A DNA stretch of 64,000 bases from Chlorokybus atmophyticus (lineage: Eukaryota > Plantae > Mesostigma and Chlorokybus algae): NCBI GenBank assembly GCA_009103225.1, contig RHPI01000890.1, forward strand, positions 275,579 to 339,578, given 5' to 3'. Positions within the stretch are counted from its first letter, which is position 1. Each line of letters begins with the position of its first letter. The notes beneath the pieces are model-generated. The model was not told where the DNA came from, did no database searches, and worked only from the letters and a program-made list of their open reading frames with translations. Below, piece by piece: positions 33,343 through 44,389 of the stretch. Both the position numbers and the translations under genes were made by a program.

Positions 33343-36300
33343 GTGTGTTCGCTTTCCACAGTTGGGTATTAGGTTTGATGCTCTTCACCTGCCTCCGTGC
33401 GAGTCGTGTGTTGTAGTGCTCGCATGTTATGGCATCATGCGTTGAGGCAGCTACTTATGTAACAAGATCTCCATACAATTGCATGGGAAGCGAGCATTGC
33501 CGACAGCAATTTGTAGCCCATGCCCATCGTTATTCGCTTGGTGAATTTGTATGCATTGCCTACCAAGCTTGCATTGCTGCGCACCTTGAAGTGTATAACA
33601 GACGGTATGCTAGGATATGTGGGTGAATGTCAGAGTGGTCATGCTGTGGGCTCACTGCAGGATGCAGTGTTGGGGGAGTTGTGGTGTTTACATTAGATGT
33701 GCAAGTGGTAGTGGTACAGCTATCATCTGTGAGGAAAAGCGCAATACCCAGCATTGCAATCATGTAGTTTACGCACGAGAAACAATTTGCATTGTCAATT
33801 AGAGGTCAATATGGCCTTTACTTTGCAAGTTACAATGCAAAACATCTTGTTGGATCAATAGCAACTTCAATTGCAATCACAATAGCCATAGCAATGGTAC
33901 TAGTAATAGCAACGCTTACAACTTACTTGACAAGCTTCACGCGAGTCATGTTAGAGGCAGGTGGCATAACCAGAACCATCACTGTTTTTCGGACCCTGGG
34001 TGCAAAACGAGATTTTCAGATATTGCGGTTGTTTCCCTACCCACATGATGATGGGCGAGACAAGGCTTCTTGCAATAGGGAAACTTACAGTTAAGTATAC
34101 ATTTGCGAAGGATATAGAAATGAAGTATACAACAGGTAATCAAGTGACTTGCCATTTGACAACATTAGAAATGTTTCAAAATGGTAGTAGTAAGCATCCG
34201 GACGAAACAATTATTGACAAGCATAAATGAGCTTGCGAAGTATGGGGTAAGAGGAGGAAAGGGGGAAGAGGGGATTCATCTCGATTATTTTTTGTTATAC
34301 CACCGTGCAAGCTGATATGCACAACGCACAAGAAGATGGAGTAGGTAAGAACGAACTGTCCAAAAACTGTGTACGGTACAAGCCACATATACCACATATA
34401 TTTATGTGGAGTCGGCGGCCGGGGGGAGGAGGAGGAGTCGGTGCTAAGGGATTGAGCTTGTTAGCTTGTCAAAAAGTAAACTTCTTATCGTTTGATATAT
34501 ATTACAATAAGGTTGTTATTTTATACATCCCTTATTGAATGGCTTGGTCAGCTCCTTTCATGCCGTACGGGATGTTGTCATTTACGCAATGTACGCGAAG
34601 CCAAAACATAACGACTGAAAACGCTATATCACAAGCAACACCAGCGTGTCACACTATGATATAGCAATATCAACTTGATGTTGTTTTGTTGTAACATCCG
34701 CTGATATAATTTATGTTTGTAACAATACGTTGATATGTTTATGGTGAAATACACGAAATGCAATTGCGTTGCATTTTAACCTTAATATGTCAAAAATATT
34801 ATCTTTATACATATCGCATTTATATTCGTTACATTATACGTTGCATGTATACATTTGTCACTTTTGCATGCCTCTATAAATGGAATAGCAAGTACTTACA
34901 TACATGTAAAAGACCAACTTGCAAAGCTGGATAAAGGCCATTTATGCCAGTTTTGCAAGTCAGGCTTCGACATGTGCCTGCGCAAGGAGTTACCTTAAAC
35001 ATATGGAAAACCAGTGCGGTTAATAGCTAACCACGTGTTTATCAAATTTCGCGGGTAACTTGCAGCTTCAATTGCACGAGTTGCTAATGCACTATGACAT
35101 TAGGTATGCAAGCTGCACAAAAGAAGATCACCGGATCGCTTTTGATGAACAGTACGCAAGACTTGTCTTTGCGCCGCGCAAAGACAATTCTTGCGCACTT
35201 GCGGCAACATAATCTTGGTCATTTTACTGACACATTTAGCACGTACATTATTATGTACATTTTAGCACACCAACACTCAAATTAACACAACCAATATACA
35301 ATCAGCGCTTGTTTACAGGCTGATCGACAGCTACATAAAAGTTACCTAAGCACTACTTGCGTGACGGTGGCTCTTGCCACACAAAAAGAGGTTAATTATG
35401 GAGCCATCTATTTATTTCTTAATAGCATGTTATAACATCTCTGCCGAAGCCGAGAAAAACTACAGCAGGAATACAGATAGCTAAACTTCAAGACACAAAT
35501 TCATGCAGCAGCAAAGAATATATGTTACTTTCGTGCACAGACAGTAAGGAAAGCGCATGCATTCACGATTGTCACGATCTCAGCAGCAGCCTTCTTGTAA
35601 GTGTTTGCATATGTGTCCATTATTGAGACGTAATACACACTATGTGCACTGATATTATACAATGTGTGACAATCAGTTGAATGGTAAAAAGGATTGACAT
35701 GCTATGCATAACATCAATGCAACCTTTGGTGAAATGCATGTAAAAAAACGTTTTTGTTGTAGTTATTACAGTCTGATATATGCGTTTTACCTGATGATTA
35801 CCAATGACAATACTTATGTTATAGACTAGTGATTTTTCTTTTAAACAGTAGTAATGAGCTAGGTAATCAATTAAAAAGTCTAATGTATATAGTATATTAC
35901 ATTCCGATGATGCAATGCATTGTGATTCACTTTGCTTTTTATGCTTTACTGAATGTTACGCAAGGTTGTAAATCGCGTTGAAAGCTTTGCAATTGCAGGT
36001 TTTTGTACCTTCGATTGAGCATTGTTACACAATATGTTTATTTGCTCTTACACGCGAATACTCATATGGTGATCATGACTAGCCCAGTTTAAATTATTAA
36101 TTTATATGCTGCATGCTTTTCGACTTGTAGCTTAACGCTATGGCGAGCCCCCATTTATCACCACTCTGAAGAGGGAGGTTGCCCGTATGTGGCTTGCAAT
36201 TTTTCTTCGTTTGTAAAGTTGTTAAGGAAATAAGCAATTGACAATTAATTGCGTGTTCAATATATCGTGAGTAATTACCGGCTCCAATCACACAAGTTTC

Positions 36301-37897
36301 TAGAGCGCTATGTGGCACCAACATTCAAGATCGCCGTTATTAACGAACGCCCTTAAGTAAGCTCAAAAAGGGGTACCATCAAATCGCCAAGAAAGAAAAG
36401 AAAGTGAAAGATTTCAACTCGCGGCATTTCTACCGCCAGTGGCAACTCTTTATTTGCTGGCTCCCTTAGCACGTACATTACACCAATGTACATATTAACA
36501 AGTCTGCACAAAAAGGAACGAAACTTATATACAATCAGCGCTTGCATAAGGTGGGTATGCGTAAACCAGCAGCTACAATATACTATAGTTGCCAAAGCGC
36601 TTCTAGCAATGCGGTGTATCCTGTTGCAAGAAGTGGTGTTCATTAGCACGTCAAGTTTGGTCCTCAATATCATGTATAGTATATAATGCGACACTCCTAC
36701 TCAAGCTAACGTATGGGCACATACGCACACATGCACAATTAGCATAAAAGGTACCCATGTAGGAGTCAACGCCACATCCTGTACACTCAACAACCGCTCA
36801 AGTGCTCGTAATACCTTCATTATGATAATAAATATGATACGGCGTCATTACGTGACATGTTGGATTGTATGGTATTTCATCTCAGTATGACAGTTGCCTG
36901 TACATATGTAAACAACATAGTCAATAGCCGTAAGAACAGAACGTTATTAACAAGTAATAATGCAAGTGACGTAATAACATGTTTAAATGATGATCATTTT
37001 CTGCGCTGTCTCTCTTTGTCTCGTTATATAATGCGGATGCCCCTTCTCATGCAAAGTGCCCCCCTTGACTTCCAAATTTTGTATTGTAGTAAAAGTAGGA
37101 CCCCCCCCCCCCCTTTGGGTATACTATAGAATTGTGCTTGCTTGGGCAGTGTGAACGGCGAACACGTCATAAGCAGTTGTTGTGAGCCTCCTCTCAAGGC
37201 GACATAAATTTGCGTTCGTGGCGGGGTGCGATCTGCTCGGCACGTGCGCTGCTTTCTACTGGACCGCTGGTACGGGCACCCGCGCCACAAAGAAAGCAGC
37301 TTTTGTCAGTTTTGATGCGACTTCTGCATAAGAATCACCCTCAACGCGACGAGGCGGCTGCAAGCACCTCGCAATCGTGACGCGCCCATGCGCTTCTTAT
37401 AATGAAGGCCCTTCAACGCCACACCTTTCACTGTCAGGGGCCTCACGTGAGGGTGTCACGCCAATATCCCCATGATGGGACAAGCCGCCCATCCGACGGC
37501 ATATAGACCACAGACGTCAAATCAGACCAGCAACAAAAATATCAATAGGGACCCCACCATTGGCTTCTGCAGGGACGGCTTCCACGGAGAGTCGCGACTC
37601 AGGGCGCGACCCAGAGCTTAGCAATGCAGTCCATTGCTTACTCGCTCGGTTTTGTATGATGCCCTTCCCCGTCCTTTTCCACTTCGTCGTCTTGCATTCT
37701 CGCTCAAAGCAAGGACTGCTTTTTGTGCCTTTCTCCGACAGTCATGTTCAACAAACCGCCGTAATACACACGCTAAACACCGACGGCTGGTGCGGCATAC
37801 ACTGTGTTAAGCTTCAGCCGGACAATGAAGCCGGTGGTACGTTTGAATGTTTGTGTGTGCGTAAATTCACCACAGTTGACGGTACTTGTGCTGGTGC

Positions 37898-37933: not shown

Positions 37934-38712
37934 TCTCCGCGGTATGGTGCATGTCGCAAGCGGAAAGCTGTCCTGTTGTGTTGCTGCTTTCTAGCAGCAA
38001 CGTGGTTGTGCTTACCAGCTCCAACAACAACGCTCAACAGTCGCAGCAGCGGTGGTGACACTGAGCCAGTGCATGAGGTGCGTGTTTGGTACGCAAGCAT
38101 GGTGGGGGCGGGTGGGTTGGCATTCAGAATCGCTGGCAAAGATGATGTCAGCGTGCATGCTACAGCGGGTTGCACCGCTCACTGCAGTAACTGCAAGTAT
38201 AGTCGGTCATACGTCAAGTTCCAGCAAGGCTGTAGGCATGCAGTTGTCGTGCTAGTGTGCAGTTCAGTAACATGCTTGGCTTCGTGTGCATGCAGCTTGC
38301 ACATGTAGGTATATGTGCCTGCCGCTACTTGTAGCGCATAGCCGTCGCTTGTGGTGCGCATAAGTTGGCGCCCGCGGCCAGCCGCGGTTGTGACTAGACA
38401 GCTGCCGCGTGAATGACTCTTGTCACTCCGCTCAGTCCTTGGCCAAAGCGGTGACTGCGTTTTTGCGCGTTCAAGCTTGCAACGCTACTAGGGGCTGTTG
38501 TAGTATGCATGCTATTCAGTTTGCGTCACGCTTAGGATTCTGCCGCCACGCCTGTCAGACGGCTTGCTTTTTGCACTTTCAAGGCACCCTTTGGCACTGG
38601 AAAGCAAGCAAGCTTGAACAACCACCACCACAAACACGACAGCAAGAACCACACTGGTCGTATACACACTGCTTCATCATCCTACAGGGTGCTGGTCGGC
38701 GGCCTCAACATC

Positions 38713-41700
38713 ATGGGGCTTGCGGAGAGGAGCGGCATGATGGTGAAGCGGCCCACTCAGCCAACCCCTCGTGTACAGCTGCTGCTGGTGTGTGCCGTGC
38801 TGGCATGGGCGGCGGCATTCGTGCCTGGGGCCGAGGGAGGATCATTGGATGCGGACGGGAAGGCGCTGCTGGCGTTCAAGAACGCCTTAACGGTGGACAC
38901 GCACAAGTCCACGGCGGCATGGCTGCCGGGCACGGACCCGTGCATGTGGCCAGGCGTGGCATGCAGTGGGAGCGGCGATGCTGCGAGGGTGTCAGTGGTG
39001 TCGATGACCAACTGGGGTCTCCAAGGCCGCCTCGTCCCTGAGCTCGGCGTTATGGACGCCCTCCTTGACCTCACCCTCAACATCAACTCCCTGCAGGGAC
39101 CCCTGCCGGACACCTATGGCAACATGACTAGCCTCGTCACGCTGTAAGTTAAAGGCAATGCTTTGCTTGATTGAGAAATGGTGAAGTATTGACACAAGAA
39201 CTGATGTGTATCCTGTTACATTAGCTCCGTTGGCCATAATCCAGTGGGTGGCGGAATTCCTGAGAGCATTCTGCAGCTACCTCAGCTCGCCACATTGTAA
39301 GTGATCTTTGTTCAATGTTTGTAGTCATAATCTGGGCAAGTCGCAGCGCATTGATGTTTGTGGGTTGTAGAGAGATAAGCAATGCTGGACTCTACGGCCC
39401 TATTCCGGACATGACTGGCCTCAAACAGCTGCGCTCCGTGTAAGCGCGTGTGCAATTCTTATCCGCAATGCACATGCAACCACACAAAGCTTACACGAGC
39501 ACTGGTGTTCACACATGCAGCGACCTTTCCGTGAACAATCTTATTGGCCCTGTCCCGGAATTCGATTCTGCACAGGCTATCTCACAGCTGTAAGTATCTC
39601 GTCAAGTTGTGGCACATATCAAGTGGATGGAAGTTATTAACATGGCAACTACGCACTCGTCGTCAGTCAACTTAATAAGCTTTGTGTGCCCCTCAGGTGG
39701 TTGTTCAACAACTCCTTGTCCGGTGGCATCCCGAAGTCGCTCGGCAGCATGACAACATTTACCTCCCTGTGAGTGCAGGTCTTTTCGCTTTTGGTTGCAA
39801 AGCAAAAGGATTTCGCGTGTAAACATACATTTGACCTTTCTCGCATTGCAGTTACCTTAACAGCAATCAGCTCGCTGGTGTCATTCCTGAAGAGCTCTCT
39901 TCCCTTGCCAACATACTGCTGTGAGTGCCCCTGGCAAATGCACTGACCTGTGTGTTTGTTGCATGCAAGCTGCAACTAATTCGTACCCAATGTCACAGCG
40001 ACTTTTCCAACAACCATCTCATTGGAGAGGTTCCTGCTTCGTTTTGGTCGGCACCGCAGCTTGGGTAAGGGCAAGTACTTTGTGACAAACATGCAACAGA
40101 AATTCGCGCGAGTGTGTCGCGCGGAGCTTTCTCAGTTTGCTTGCCAGAAGTGTGTCGTGACGACCCTTTCATGAAATCCAATTCGTTGCAGGTTGAGTGG
40201 CAACCTTGGGCTGTGTGGGCCCGTTTTAGGCTCCGCGTCTGCTAACATATCAAACACAAACATTGGCCAGAACTGTAAGCAGCCACCTTTCCTCACTGCT
40301 TGTGCTTCTCATCACCTCATGACTCATCTTCCTGACCATCACACTGCGTTGAATGTCTGGGCAGGCACATGTGATGTTGATGGCTACGCATACTCTGGTC
40401 TGCCGGGCCGCTGCTTTCGGGAGGTGCGCTTGGCGTCGCAGGCGCAGGCAGCTGCGGGTTGTCTAGCGTTGGGCGGGCAATTGGCCGAACCACACAACAG
40501 CTTGCAAGCCACCATTGCGTGGAATGTGTGCCGGAGCATCAATGCGACTTCTTGCTGGATTGGCCTGAAGCAAAGTGCCAGTCAGTATGTGTGGTTATCA
40601 GACGGCTCGGCTGCAACATACACGCCGTGGGTGCCAGGCCAACCCAGCATTACAGACGATGGTTGTGTGGTTGTCACTGGCAATAATCAGCCTCAGTTTG
40701 ACGACCGGCTTTGTGACACGGGGTCCGAGGTGGCAACGTACTTGTGCCAGCTGCCGGCAACCGTATCTTCTTCGGGCTCCATCTGTCCTGCTGGCTCCAG
40801 TGCAGCAGGCGACGGCCAATGCTACACTGCGCAACCATTTACTAACAGCGGTGTCACGGATGCGCGCAATGCTTGCGCAAGCTTGGGCGGTGACCTTGCA
40901 ACCATTGCTGGCAGCACTGCGCTTGCTGGAGCCCTGCAGGCTTGCCAAGGACAGCACTTCTGCGCCATAGGGCTCAATGACCAGGTATGTGTACATGCGT
41001 ACATAGTTTTGCTCATGTGGAACAGTTGATGCACGTCTCGCAACCGAACATCTTCTTCGCTTTCAGGTCACAGAGGGTAGCTACGTGTGGTTTGCGGACC
41101 CATCGCGCTACTCCAACTTCACGAACTGGGCTCCGGGCGAGCCTTGGCCCGGTACAACCGCCGCTTTAGCCAGTGATTGCGTGCAGATGTGGAGCTCAAC
41201 TTCACTCGGGTTCTGGAATGGCACTGCTCTCATCGTAAGACCACACTTGTAATAGCTGTCACACAAGTAGATACTTTGACCTTGTTACACGATCACCATG
41301 TACTCATCATTCCTTGTCATGCGCAGGTGACAACGCCTCGGGGGTCGTTTGTGGATGTCCCGTGTAACAACTTCGTGGGTTCCGCTCTATGCCAGATTGA
41401 TCTGAGCCCAAACAATGACTACGCTGCCTACATGGGCTGCTTCCAAAGCACTGCCTCAGACGATGTGTTGCCGATACGGTTGAGTGCGTCAAACATCACA
41501 CCCGACTCGTGCATCTCCACCTGCCACGAGTACTCGTACTCATTCGCGGGTGTTGTTGATGGGAACCAATGCCGCTGTGGAAATGTAATCTCCAGTCAAG
41601 CCCAAGTGCTCACAGGTACCAATGCAAGATTTCATTCATGTGAGACCACATGTGTATCGTCCTGCAGCTTACCTGATGCATTCTTCTTGACAGACGACTC

Positions 41701-43602
41701 CTGCACATTGCCTTGCGAAGCGGACGGGAGTGTGCTGTGTGGTGGCGCAAACGGCGCCATCACCATCTTCAACGTCTCCGCAGCAAGTAACTTTCTGCTG
41801 CATTCTTCCTCATGTGTGCAGGGTGTTGCTGTCTTATGGCACCTGACACTTGTCATGTGTGCAGAGCTGACAGCAACAACTCCCTTGGCGCTATCACCTG
41901 CTCCCCCCAAAAAGAGCAGCCACAAGACCAGGAACATTCTTATAGGAGTGGGTGTAGCGCTCTTTGTGCTTGGTAAGGAGTGCCAGTACTGTTCTCACTA
42001 TCAGGCATCAACATATGCATGTGCTCGGCAAGTTGGCTAACAGCCTCTGTACTCTGATCTTCCAGTACACATTCCCTTGTGCTGGGGCTTTTACATCCTT
42101 CTCAAGCGACGTCGCGAGAGTAAGCGTGCTCAGCGCCTCAAATTGCAGGGCGGAATGAAGTTCAAAGGCTCACGTAAGCAGCTGCTCGTACACGCTTCAA
42201 TGCCGCTCTGTGTGGTCCAGCAGTGAGTGTCTAACAACAACCAACATTGCATGCGCAGTGCAACCGCTTGTGCCTGGTGAGTGGCGCCTCTTCTCGTACT
42301 CCGAGCTCTCATACGCGACAGCCAACTTCTCGGCAGAAAGGCTTGTTGGGTGGGGCGGCTTCGGGGGTGTTTACGCTGCGGAATTCTACGATGGTACGAA
42401 CCCTTACCCCCAAACTCTAACGCTAACATGAATAAAGAATAGCAATAACATTAAGAATAAGACTAAAATCAGAATTCCCCACTGCAACATCATGTACACG
42501 TGTGCCAGGTACACGTGCGGCGGTGAAGAGGTTGGAACTGATGGGAGGTCAGGGCCAGGGCGAGTTTGAAGCGGAGCTGTCGGCACTGAGCGCCGTGCGA
42601 CACCCGAACCTTGTCTCTCTTTACGGGTGCTGCACGGAGCAGCGCAACGTGCTTCTTGTGCTTGAGATCTTGCCCGGTGGAGACCTTGCAGCGCGCCTGC
42701 ACGACAGAGCCGAGATGCCCGCTCTGCGCTTCGACTGGCTTCAGCGCCTGCGTGTGGCTGTTGGGTCCGCCAAGGGACTGGCGTACCTCCACAACGTCGC
42801 CAACATCGTTCATCGCGACATCAAGCCATCCAACATCCTTCTCGACCTTGAGGGCTTGCCCAAGATCGCAGATTTTGGTATGTGCACTGTTCGCGTGTGG
42901 TGGTTACTGCCAGCAGCTCAGCCTGTCGTGTCCACCAGTGTGTGCTCATACGCATTTTTGTCCAATGTAGGTTTGGCCAAGCTGCTTGGTGAAGACAGAC
43001 AAGTGACTGCCTTCACCACGCGCGTGGCGGGCTCGTTTGGGTATTCCGCCCCGGTAAGTGGTCCACAATGTATCATTTATCAGGAAGCATAGCGCATATC
43101 GCGTACTGAGTGCTGGTTTGTAAAACAGGAGTACCACGAGACTGGAAAGCTTGACAGAAGCAGCGACGTCTACAGTTTTGGTGTGACTCTGCTGGAACTG
43201 ATGACAGGGCGCACACCTGTGGACATGGCGCGCGAGTCGGGAGAGCAGTGGCTTGTGCTTTGGGTGAAAGCGCAGGCCGAGAAAGGCGAGCTCGCTTGCG
43301 TGTTGGACCCGAGGATGGACATTCCCGAGGAAGACAAGCCCGCCGCGTCCGAGGCGCTTAGAATTGGTCTCGCATGCATTGCGAGAGAGAAGCGCGAGCG
43401 CCCGCGCATGGTGGAAGTTGTGCGCCAGCTTGTAGAGTTGCTGCCTGCGGCTGACCCGTATGCGCAACCCGAGGAGTATGAGTCATATAAGGGTTCAGCT
43501 TCGCCGTCGTTGTCGAGTGTTTGTTCACACCCATCTCCAGACAACTCCGGAGGATTCACCGTCCCTACTGATCGCCTCAGTATGGGTGCTGCTGCTGTTT
43601 AA
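38713..43602 (+). CDS. Receptor-like kinase (RLK/Pelle): signal peptide - LRRNT - ~8 LRR - 2x C-type lectin - WSC - TM - RD Ser/Thr kinase
   Basis: DGKALLAFK..W..GTDPCMWPGVAC cap; plant-type LRRs (NxLxGxIP); CTLD1 (CLALGGQLA..CWIGL..WVPGQP..C..FDDRLC); CTLD2 (CASLGGDLA..IGLND..NWAPGEP..DVPC); WSC (YMGCF..CISTC..FAGVVDGNQCRCGN..C..PC..CGG); TM followed by KRRR; kinase FSYSEL..ATANF, GWGGFGGVY, AVK, HRDIKPSNILLD, DFG, GSFGYSAPEY, SDVYSFG. Start could also be ATG 38737. Confidence 0.95.
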
Positions 43603-44389
43603 CCTTGACTTTGTATAGAGTAGTACTGGTTCTTCATATGTGTTGTAAGTATGGCAGTTGCAAAGCATGCGAGTTGCTGGCTAGTTATTTATGTGATGTC
43701 ATCAAGTAGGACTTGATACTGCAGCGGTAGTGTACAAAGTCTGTGCTAGAATAGTAGTCCTACATAGCTTGGAACAGGTTTATTCAATCCTCTCGTCTTC
43801 TTCCTCATCTTCTTCGTCTTCTTATCCTTTCCTATCAAGCGTGTCATGAAACCCGTCTGTTGTCCTACATATGTTTCAATGTTGCATGTGGCATGCATTG
43901 TCCAACACTGCGATGTTGACTAGTGCGCCACGGTCACGCCGATACAGGCCGTGCGCGCAGACTCGTTCGCACGCATGTACATTACATCACCGTGCTGCAT
44001 CAAATATCCATGCTATGTGTACATCAAATGTGCATTGCAAATGACCACGTATTGAAGATGTATCGAACATGCAGCGAACCTGCAATATGCATAGGATCGC
44101 ACAGCAGCTATCACCATAACCACTTTCAGTCAACCGTTTGGCTACACAACTCTGCCACTATTCTACTGTACTTCTACCACCCCGTTAGTCATGCAAGTTT
44201 GTACATGCTGTTCTAAATACCTGCCCACACGGGGTGCTGCACCTATAGAATGCAGGTAACGGATGCATGTACCGATACATACATTGATGATTGAAGGTAC
44301 AAATTTGTTCACAATGAGAGAAATCACTGCCATTTGCGCATGCACATGGGTATGTTAACTCTTGCGTATGTTATGGGTGCGGTCACAGC

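What the first reader, a model, noticed from the sequence alone, without database searches (positions are those of the whole stretch)
38713..43602. Receptor kinase with a composite LRR + two C-type lectin + WSC ectodomain
Seen: one spliced ORF with signal peptide, plant-type LRR cap and ~8 LRRs, two C-type lectin domains, a WSC domain, one TM and an RD kinase with intact VK/HRD/DFG motifs. Established: land-plant LRR-RLKs and the C-lectin RLK are separate classes, and WSC domains are glycan-binding modules best known from fungal cell-wall sensors. Inference: this receptor may combine peptide/protein recognition with glycan sensing (microbial or own wall), an architecture I do not recall from land plants. 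It is the best candidate here for an undescribed perception system.
Basis: partly seen in the sequence, partly recalled or inferred. Interest (0 to 1): 0.85.

Follow-up and report, generated by a model that had tools for sequence, protein, structure and literature searches.

The report
Algal LRR–lectin–WSC receptor kinase
The early-branching green alga Chlorokybus has an intact receptor kinase gene whose outer part strings together leucine-rich repeats, two C-type lectin domains and a WSC domain; I found this mix in no other plant-type receptor kinase except one paralog, and what it senses is untested.

Summary
Window 38713-43602 (+) carries one spliced gene of 18 exons and 17 GT-AG introns of 74-127 nt. 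It encodes about 1125 aa: signal peptide, LRRNT_2 cap, 8 plant-type LRRs, two C-type lectin-like domains (CTLDs), an 8-Cys WSC domain, a short stalk, one TM helix and an RD kinase of the RLK/Pelle type. The gene is already annotated as one model in the public Chlorokybus atmophyticus genome (Chrsp107S01328). A second Chlorokybus gene (Chrsp50S06449) has the same collinear architecture at 40% overall and 56% kinase identity, so the fusion is old and maintained, not an assembly accident. Sequence searches found no other protein with this combination. The nearest matches are invertebrate and vertebrate mannose-receptor-like proteins, a Prymnesium protein and fungal WSC proteins. Those searches are shallow for distant kin. 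The glycan-sensing reading is only partly backed. Both CTLDs have lost the canonical Ca2+/sugar motifs (QPS/FDD and EPW/WNG), which leaves WSC as the best carbohydrate-binding candidate. LRR plus WSC plus C-type lectin is also the known N-terminal module set of animal polycystin-1. I read this as a lineage-specific variant of the receptor-like kinase theme: moderately interesting, function untested. The scan noted the same architecture on another piece of this genome (s1-179392).

The parts
38073..38077 (+). Possible alternative first coding exon (ATG AG | GTGCGT) implied by the public model's N-terminus MRVLVGGLNI-, spliced to the acceptor at 38685
   Evidence: P0001 starts 10 aa upstream of ATG 38713, where the window has TAC, not ATG; ATGAGGT at 38073. 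This is inferred, not verified.
38713..38838 (+). First in-frame ATG and signal peptide (aa 1-42, hydrophobic core VQLLLVCAVLAWAAAFV)
38839..38970 (+). Plant LRR N-terminal cap (LRRNT_2, Cys pair DPCMWPGVAC)
   Evidence: PF08263, 2.8e-11
38986..40192 (+). Eight plant-type LRRs. LRR3-8 are each one exon of 66-72 nt, and every intron between them is phase 2.
   Evidence: PDB matches to the GSO1/FLS2/PEPR1 ectodomains at 5e-90 to 8e-76
40193..40372 (+). LRR C-terminal cap (GNLGLCG...CxC). It spans intron 8 (40275-40364), which the JGI model retains.
   Evidence: gap-free alignment to the paralog only when intron 8 is spliced
40370..40750 (+). C-type lectin-like domain 1 (aa 313-439), with QPS...FDD in place of EPN/QPD...WND
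   Evidence: PF00059, 1.2e-8; AF2 pLDDT about 90; Foldseek hits on mannose receptor, Endo180 and CD23
40784..41395 (+). C-type lectin-like domain 2 (aa 451-596), split over exons 9-11, with EPW...WNG. It has an extra loop, VTTxxGxFxDxxC, that the paralog also has.
   Evidence: PF00059, 28.8 bits on P0001:480-650
41429..41776 (+). WSC domain (aa 608-697, 8 Cys); contains the 78-nt intron 41616-41693
   Evidence: PF01822, 2.3e-14; 59.9 bits, 1-82/82
41777..41935 (+). Short Pro/Ser-rich stalk (27 aa)
41936..42103 (+). Single transmembrane helix (ILIGVGVALFVLVHIPLCWGFYILL), followed by the stop-transfer KRRR
42104..42341 (+). Juxtamembrane segment. An alternative donor at 42209 would add 12 aa.
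42342..43443 (+). RD Ser/Thr kinase domain of the RLK/Pelle type. All catalytic motifs are intact: G-loop 42348-42374, VAIK-type Lys 42520-42534, HRD 42811-42834, DFG 42871-42972 across an intron.
43444..43602 (+). Ser/Pro-rich C-terminal tail and stop codon

Best explanation
This is an intact single gene of Chlorokybus atmophyticus (public model Chrsp107S01328). It encodes a type-I membrane receptor kinase in this order: signal peptide, plant LRR cap, 8 LRRs, tandem C-type lectin-like domains, WSC domain, short stalk, TM helix, active-looking RD RLK/Pelle kinase. It belongs to a small family with at least two members in this alga.

The family most likely arose when a CTLD-CTLD-WSC cassette was placed between the LRR block and the TM helix of an algal LRR-RLK. 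That origin is inferred.

Proposed mechanism, also inferred: the membrane-proximal WSC domain, perhaps with the two non-canonical CTLDs, binds a polysaccharide or glycoprotein. The ligand could come from the alga's own wall or mucilage, or from microbes. The distal LRR block contacts a protein or peptide ligand or a co-receptor. Ligand-driven clustering then triggers trans-phosphorylation of the RD kinase, as in other plant receptor kinases.
For: Gene integrity:
- 17 GT-AG introns of uniform size, no internal stop, a single signal peptide and a single TM helix.
- The public one-gene model is identical over 1125 aligned residues.

Domains:
- Confirmed by Pfam.
- Confirmed by PDB sequence search.
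- Confirmed by an AF2 model plus Foldseek.

Maintained architecture:
- Paralog P0197 (Chrsp50S06449) has the same Pfam set in the same order.
- Identity to it is 56% in the kinase and 30-37% in the ectodomain modules.
- It also shares the odd CTLD2 loop and the CxC cap.

Kinase:
- Best PDB hits are RIPK, BAK1, BRI1, PBL2 and Pto at about 1e-58, against IRAK4 at about 1e-38.
- Catalytic motifs are intact.
- In a quick ML tree the two paralogs are sisters (SH-aLRT 90). The nearest other kinase by path length is a Chlorokybus LRR-RLK, P0237.

Ectodomain character and ligand class:
- 9 N-x-S/T sequons and 28 Cys lie outside the membrane, against 1 sequon inside.
- WSC domains are documented glycan binders: fungal WSC3 binds long beta-1,3-glucan (PMC7816849).
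Against: - No transcript evidence could be obtained. The search for transcript-derived fragments was blank.
- No ligand or expression data exist.
- Both CTLDs lack the canonical Ca2+/sugar ligands, so a carbohydrate role for them is unproven.
- The WSC part of the AF2 model is only partly confident.
- The cassette-insertion origin rests on a quick tree with sparse sampling of LRR-RLK subfamilies and no C-LEC sequences.
- The JGI model and my model differ at intron 8 and at the start codon.
Confidence: 0.6

Rival explanations
1. Annotation fusion: two neighbouring genes, an LRR receptor-like protein and a CTLD-WSC receptor kinase, are read through as one.
For: No transcript evidence was obtainable. 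The LRR-to-CTLD junction contains an in-frame 90-nt segment that the two models treat differently.
Against: There is no stop codon, TM helix, second signal peptide or ATG-led hydrophobic start between the LRR cap and CTLD1. Only 90-127 nt separate the exons there, as everywhere else in the gene. The independent paralog P0197 has the same continuous order and aligns without a gap across that junction.
Confidence: 0.06
2. The ectodomain works mainly as an adhesion or matrix anchor, tying the plasma membrane to the wall or mucilage or mediating cell-cell contact in the cell packets. That would resemble the polycystin-1 N-terminus or mannose-receptor-family proteins. The kinase would report mechanical strain rather than a soluble ligand.
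For: The same three module types form the matrix-binding N-terminus of polycystin-1 (PMC9672506). The tandem CTLDs resemble the mannose receptor, Endo180 and DEC205. WSC is the sensor head of fungal wall-integrity sensors (established knowledge). The CTLDs lack the monosaccharide-binding motifs.
Against: The stalk is only about 27 residues, not a long Ser/Thr-rich spring like fungal Wsc1. Nothing here separates this reading from ligand perception; it overlaps with the best explanation.
Confidence: 0.25
3. A decaying or non-functional lineage-specific duplicate with no current signalling role.
For: Only two members are known, both in one species' genome. Expression is unverified.
Against: The ORF is intact over 18 exons, all splice sites are canonical, all kinase catalytic motifs and all 8 WSC cysteines are kept, and the paralogs are far more similar in the kinase (56%) than in linkers (25-28%).
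Confidence: 0.05

Closest known systems
Plant LRR receptor-like kinases (RLK/Pelle family, LRR class)
   Same: LRRNT_2 cap, 24-residue plant-specific LRRs, a Cys-pair C-cap, a single TM helix and an RD kinase most similar to BAK1, BRI1 and RLCK-VII kinases.
   Different: About 400 residues of CTLD-CTLD-WSC sit between the LRR cap and the membrane. The kinase falls outside all land-plant groups sampled in the tree.
Land-plant C-type lectin RLK (C-LEC class, e.g. Arabidopsis At1g52310; named from my own knowledge)
   Same: A C-type lectin-like domain on an RLK/Pelle kinase. A review states that kinase-associated C-Lec goes back to the earliest streptophytes (PMC10868138).
   Different: C-LEC RLKs have a single CTLD as the whole ectodomain, with no LRR or WSC.
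Polycystin-1 (PKD1) extracellular region
   Same: Combines LRR, WSC and C-type lectin modules in one ectodomain, thought to bind matrix components and ligands (PMC9672506).
   Different: The order is different (LRR-WSC-PKD-CTL), the LRRs are animal-type, and there is one CTLD. PKD repeats, REJ, GAIN/GPS and 11 TM segments follow, with no kinase. The module set was probably assembled independently.
Fungal Wsc1-type cell-wall integrity sensors and WSC lectins
   Same: A cysteine-rich WSC domain close to the membrane of a single-pass surface protein. WSC domains bind wall glycans (PMC7816849).
   Different: Fungal sensors have a long Ser/Thr-rich stalk and a short non-catalytic tail (established knowledge). 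Here the stalk is 27 aa and the tail is a kinase.
Mannose receptor family (MR, Endo180/uPARAP, DEC205, PLA2R) and invertebrate multi-CTLD proteins
   Same: Tandem CTLDs. These are the best sequence and fold matches for the lectin part. Some invertebrate members also carry WSC.
   Different: No CysR or FNII domains, only two CTLDs, and a plant-type kinase.

Membership tests
RLK/Pelle (IRAK) kinase family | Kinase domain closer to plant RLKs than to other kinase groups, with IRAK as the nearest animal relative | tested here: met
   RIPK, BAK1, BRI1, PBL2 and Pto at 5e-59 to 1e-54; IRAK4 at about 1e-38; EGFR at 3e-30; best single-kinase hits are plant RLKs at 44-47% identity.
RLK/Pelle (IRAK) kinase family | Catalytically competent RD kinase (G-loop, VAIK Lys, alphaC Glu, HRD, DFG, APE) | tested here: met
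   One search gives the motif positions. Activity itself was not tested.
Plant LRR-RLK | Signal peptide, LRRNT_2 cap, plant-specific LRRs, single TM helix, cytoplasmic kinase | tested here: met
Plant LRR-RLK | Membership of one of the named land-plant LRR subfamilies (I-XV) by kinase phylogeny | tested here: inconclusive
   outside LRR-VIII-2 and all other sampled groups. Most LRR subfamilies were not in the sample.
C-LEC RLK subfamily | Ectodomain made of a single C-type lectin domain | tested here: not met
   two CTLDs plus LRR and WSC.
C-LEC RLK subfamily | Kinase domain in the C-LEC clade | not tested
Sugar-binding C-type lectin (CRD sensu stricto) | EPN or QPD motif plus WND motif that ligate Ca2+ at site 2 | tested here: not met
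   CTLD1 has QPS and FDD; CTLD2 has EPW and WNG. The paralog has EPY/WRD and EPS/IDW.
C-type lectin-like fold (CTLD) | Pfam Lectin_C above the gathering score, and the CTLD fold | tested here: met
   AF2 pLDDT is 85-95 for both domains. CD23 matches at TM 0.8, rmsd 2.4 A.
WSC domain | Pfam PF01822 above the gathering score, with 8 conserved cysteines | tested here: met
   59.9 bits, 1-82/82. The 8 Cys appear in the 18-exon model after the 78-nt intron is removed.
Fungal Wsc1-type wall-integrity sensor | Long Ser/Thr-rich O-mannosylated stalk and a short non-catalytic cytoplasmic tail | tested here: not met
   27-aa stalk, and a roughly 375-aa cytoplasmic part that includes a kinase.
Polycystin-1 | PKD repeats, REJ, GAIN/GPS and an 11-TM channel-like region | tested here: not met
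   One search shows no such Pfam domains. One search shows one TM helix.

The most novel reading that the evidence does not exclude
A streptophyte-alga receptor family in which one chain couples an LRR module for protein or peptide recognition to a wall- or glycan-binding CTLD-CTLD-WSC module on a plant Pelle kinase. It would be an early, independently assembled counterpart of the polycystin-1 type ectodomain. It would act as a combined wall-integrity and pattern sensor, and it was not carried into land plants.
Probability: 0.3. Interest if true: 0.6.

Novelty: new variant of a known kind. Interest (0 to 1): 0.42.

Why it matters
Chlorokybus belongs to one of the earliest-diverging streptophyte lineages (PMC10868138), where plant-type receptor kinases are still few: 11 are reported there (same source). 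Two of them appear to carry LRR, lectin-like and WSC modules in one chain. That suggests ectodomain shuffling onto the Pelle kinase was already under way at the base of the lineage. It also offers a tractable candidate for how an alga without the land-plant malectin- or WAK-type sensors might monitor its wall or surrounding glycans. The parallel with polycystin-1 suggests that this module set has been combined in surface proteins more than once.

Tried and rejected
- Ectodomain search (P0001 region 340-770). It returned only the gene itself, abalone and brittle-star mannose-receptor-like proteins, and fungal or unnamed WSC proteins. It missed even the paralog, so its blank is weak evidence.
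- Search for transcript-derived protein fragments spanning the LRR-CTLD junction. Nothing was found, so there is no expression evidence either way.
- Exhaustive phmmer search with exon 9. Among the best 150 hits only the gene itself joins CTLDs to an RLK-type kinase. P0149 is an unrelated kinase-CTLD-FKBP protein from a metagenome.
- Metagenome scan with a CTLD1-CTLD2 alignment. The 79 loci hold generic CTLDs at 23-48% identity. None carries WSC or LRR, and none has an RLK-like kinase in one gene. No close orthologue was found.
- Plasmid megablast. Blank, as expected for a eukaryotic gene.
- Literature. No held paper contains Chlorokybus with WSC, or Lectin_C with WSC and Pkinase. The two RLK and PRR surveys I checked do not mention WSC or C-type lectins. 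Gong and Han 2021 (Plant J), the census most likely to list this gene, is not held.
- Retention of intron 8, as in the JGI model, was rejected on the paralog alignment.
- My first 17-exon model, with an unspliced WSC exon, was rejected because it adds 3 Cys and truncates the WSC profile match.
Full report
**What is in the sequence**

Three-frame translation of 38500-43800 shows a chain of open segments on the + strand that read as one receptor kinase. I enumerated GT/GC-AG pairs between peptide anchors. Together with the extra WSC-exon intron described below, this gives a single continuous CDS from ATG 38713 to the stop at 43600-43602.

The final model has 18 exons and 17 GT-AG introns of 74-127 nt, most with GTAAG/GTGAG donors. 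LRR3 to LRR8 are each one exon of 66-72 nt, and every intron between them is in phase 2.

**Identity of the gene**

An exhaustive phmmer search with the largest exon returned P0001, a protein of 1165 aa. P0001 is identical to my model over all 1125 aligned residues. It is EukProt EP00898_Chlorokybus_atmophyticus_P008932, also known as jgi/Chlat1/903/Chrsp107S01328. The window is therefore Chlorokybus atmophyticus, and the gene is already annotated publicly as one model.

The public model differs from mine in three places.
- **WSC intron.** It removes a 78-nt intron inside my exon 11 (41616-41693, GT..AG). I accept this. Removal gives the canonical eight-cysteine WSC domain and a full-length Pfam match (1-82 of 82, 59.9 bits, against 53.8 bits and 1-73 for the unspliced exon).
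- **Intron 8.** It keeps the 90-nt in-frame intron 8 (40275-40364). I reject this. The donor is GTAAGC, and only the spliced version aligns without a gap to the paralog across the LRR cap (GQNCTCD... against GSACSCQ...).
- **Start codon.** It starts 10 aa upstream with an M where the window has TAC. This fits a tiny first coding exon, ATGAG|GT at 38073, spliced to the acceptor at 38685. The mature protein is the same either way.

**Domains**

Pfam on exon pieces, on P0001 and on sub-ranges gives the following:
- LRRNT_2 and LRR_1/4/8.
- Two Lectin_C stretches. CTLD2 alone scores 28.8 bits against a cut-off of 22.6.
- WSC.
- Pkinase at 1.6e-42.

Hydropathy shows just two hydrophobic stretches, the signal peptide and one TM helix followed by KRRR. 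Nine of the ten N-x-S/T sequons and 28 cysteines lie outside the membrane.

The LRR part matches plant receptor ectodomains such as GSO1, FLS2 and PEPR1 at 5e-90 to 8e-76.

I modelled residues 345-745 of P0001 with AlphaFold2, using 54 aligned CTLD and WSC segments. Mean pLDDT is 73.6. Both CTLDs score 85-95, and the WSC part is only partly confident. Foldseek's best matches are tandem-CTLD fragments of Endo180/uPARAP, mannose receptor, DEC205 and PLA2R. Single CTLDs superpose on CD23 at TM about 0.8 and rmsd about 2.4 A.

The kinase has all catalytic motifs and is of the RD type.

**One gene or two?**

No transcript data could be reached; the search for transcript-derived fragments was blank. 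The internal evidence is still strong.
- Between the LRR cap and CTLD1 there is no stop codon, no TM helix and no second signal peptide.
- Intron spacing there is the same as everywhere else in the gene.
- A second Chlorokybus protein, P0197 (1049 aa, Chrsp50S06449), has the same Pfam set in the same order.
- P0197 aligns collinearly at 40% overall identity. Module by module: LRR 35%, CTLD1 30%, CTLD2 37%, WSC 37%, kinase 56%, linkers 25-28%.
- Shared details include the CxC cap and an unusual CTLD2 loop (VTT..G.F.D..C).

Two paralogs this diverged that still keep the whole architecture argue that the fusion is old and under selection. The scan's note s1-179392 describes the same four-part ectodomain on another piece of this genome. 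It is probably this paralog, but I could not link the two directly.

**Kinase placement**

PDB sequence search puts the kinase with RIPK, BAK1, BRI1, PBL2 and Pto at about 1e-58, well ahead of IRAK4 at about 1e-38. The best single-kinase database hits are PERK- and ALE2-like RLKs at 44-47% identity.

I built a quick IQ-TREE tree (LG+G4, 111 kinase domains).
- The two paralogs are sisters (SH-aLRT 90).
- The nearest other kinase by path length is P0237, a plain Chlorokybus LRR-RLK.
- A branch with 98 support separates these three and the outgroup from all 107 land-plant sequences sampled. Those include PERK, ALE2, CrRLK1L, LRR-VIII-2, CRK, SD, WAK-like, RKF3 and RLCK-VII.

Sampling is biased and lacks C-LEC and most LRR subfamilies. 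The tree shows only that the kinase is not nested in any sampled land-plant group. It is consistent with a cassette of CTLD-CTLD-WSC having been inserted into an algal LRR-RLK.

**Is the architecture found elsewhere?**

Among the best 150 of 859 hits of the exhaustive search, only the gene itself joins CTLDs to an RLK-type kinase. P0149 is an unrelated kinase-CTLD-FKBP protein from a metagenome.

The named top hits are mannose-receptor-like or uncharacterised multi-CTLD proteins of invertebrates (krill, crinoid, Owenia, Patella, amphioxus) and a Prymnesium protein. Several of the invertebrate proteins also contain WSC.

The ectodomain word-index search found nothing further, but it also missed the paralog, so it is insensitive here. 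A metagenome scan found only generic CTLDs.

In the literature I could reach:
- No paper combines Chlorokybus with WSC, or Lectin_C with WSC and Pkinase.
[quoted passage not shown] That census may already list this gene. It is not held.

**How it probably works**

What is shown is a secreted, glycosylatable, Cys-rich ectodomain, one TM helix and an intact RD Pelle-type kinase. What follows is inferred.

Alignments to solved CTLDs show that the sugar/Ca2+ site is not canonical. CTLD1 has QPS and FDD, and CTLD2 has EPW and WNG, where SP-D and other sugar-binding CTLDs have EPN and WND. The paralog is degenerate at these positions as well. Classical monosaccharide binding by the CTLDs is therefore not expected.

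WSC domains are documented glycan binders; fungal WSC3 binds long beta-1,3-glucan (PMC7816849). This makes the membrane-proximal WSC the best candidate for carbohydrate contact with the wall, the mucilage or microbial glycans. The distal LRR block would bind a protein or peptide ligand or a co-receptor. Clustering would then activate the kinase by trans-phosphorylation, as in other plant receptor kinases.

An adhesion or strain-sensing role overlaps with this reading. It is suggested by polycystin-1, whose extracellular region also combines LRR, WSC and C-type lectin modules implicated in matrix and ligand binding (PMC9672506).

**Surroundings**

The flanking ORFs are unrelated: glycosidase-like segments near 29.4-30.5 kb and a CP12-like gene at 32.4-33.3 kb. 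There is no tandem array of receptor kinases in 28-54 kb.

**Verdict**

This is a real, intact, publicly annotated gene with an unusual composite ectodomain. It is one of at least two such genes in Chlorokybus, and I found the architecture in no other plant-type receptor kinase.

It is a new variant of the receptor-like kinase theme rather than a new kind of system. Its glycan-sensing role rests mainly on the WSC domain and remains untested.

Noticed in passing
window 38986-40192: LRR3-LRR8 are each encoded by one 66-72-nt exon, and every intron between them is in phase 2. This layout would allow repeats to be gained or lost by exon duplication or skipping. The paralog P0197 aligns with a gap where about one LRR would be (about 23 residues).
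   Followed up: partly
window 40275-40364 and 38073-38077: The public JGI model Chrsp107S01328 seems to retain a 90-nt in-frame intron, adding 30 aa of low-complexity sequence between the LRR cap and CTLD1. It also seems to use a 5-nt first coding exon about 600 nt upstream.
   Followed up: partly
window 34000-37000: An AT-rich stretch (GC 0.35-0.42) lies directly upstream of the gene, which is at GC 0.50-0.60. It may be an intergenic or repeat region. I did not examine it.
   Followed up: no
P0189 (Chlorokybus Chrsp387S05503, 804 aa): A Chlorokybus protein with two or three tandem Pelle-type kinase domains and no detected ectodomain.
   Followed up: no
P0149 (ENA metagenome protein, 1092 aa): An N-terminal protein kinase followed by three C-type lectin domains and a C-terminal FKBP domain. 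This is an unrelated but odd kinase-lectin combination.
   Followed up: no
L047 and L048, 6001-6240 and 8353-8967: Two near-identical metagenome contigs carry a CTLD match and, about 2 kb downstream on the same strand, a Ser/Thr kinase match at 34% identity to this kinase. This may be another lectin-kinase pairing, perhaps bacterial.
   Followed up: no
P0016, P0021, P0024, P0031, P0032 (Owenia, Branchiostoma, Patella): Large invertebrate multi-CTLD (mannose-receptor-like) proteins also contain a WSC domain, so CTLD plus WSC co-occurs outside polycystin-1.
   Followed up: partly
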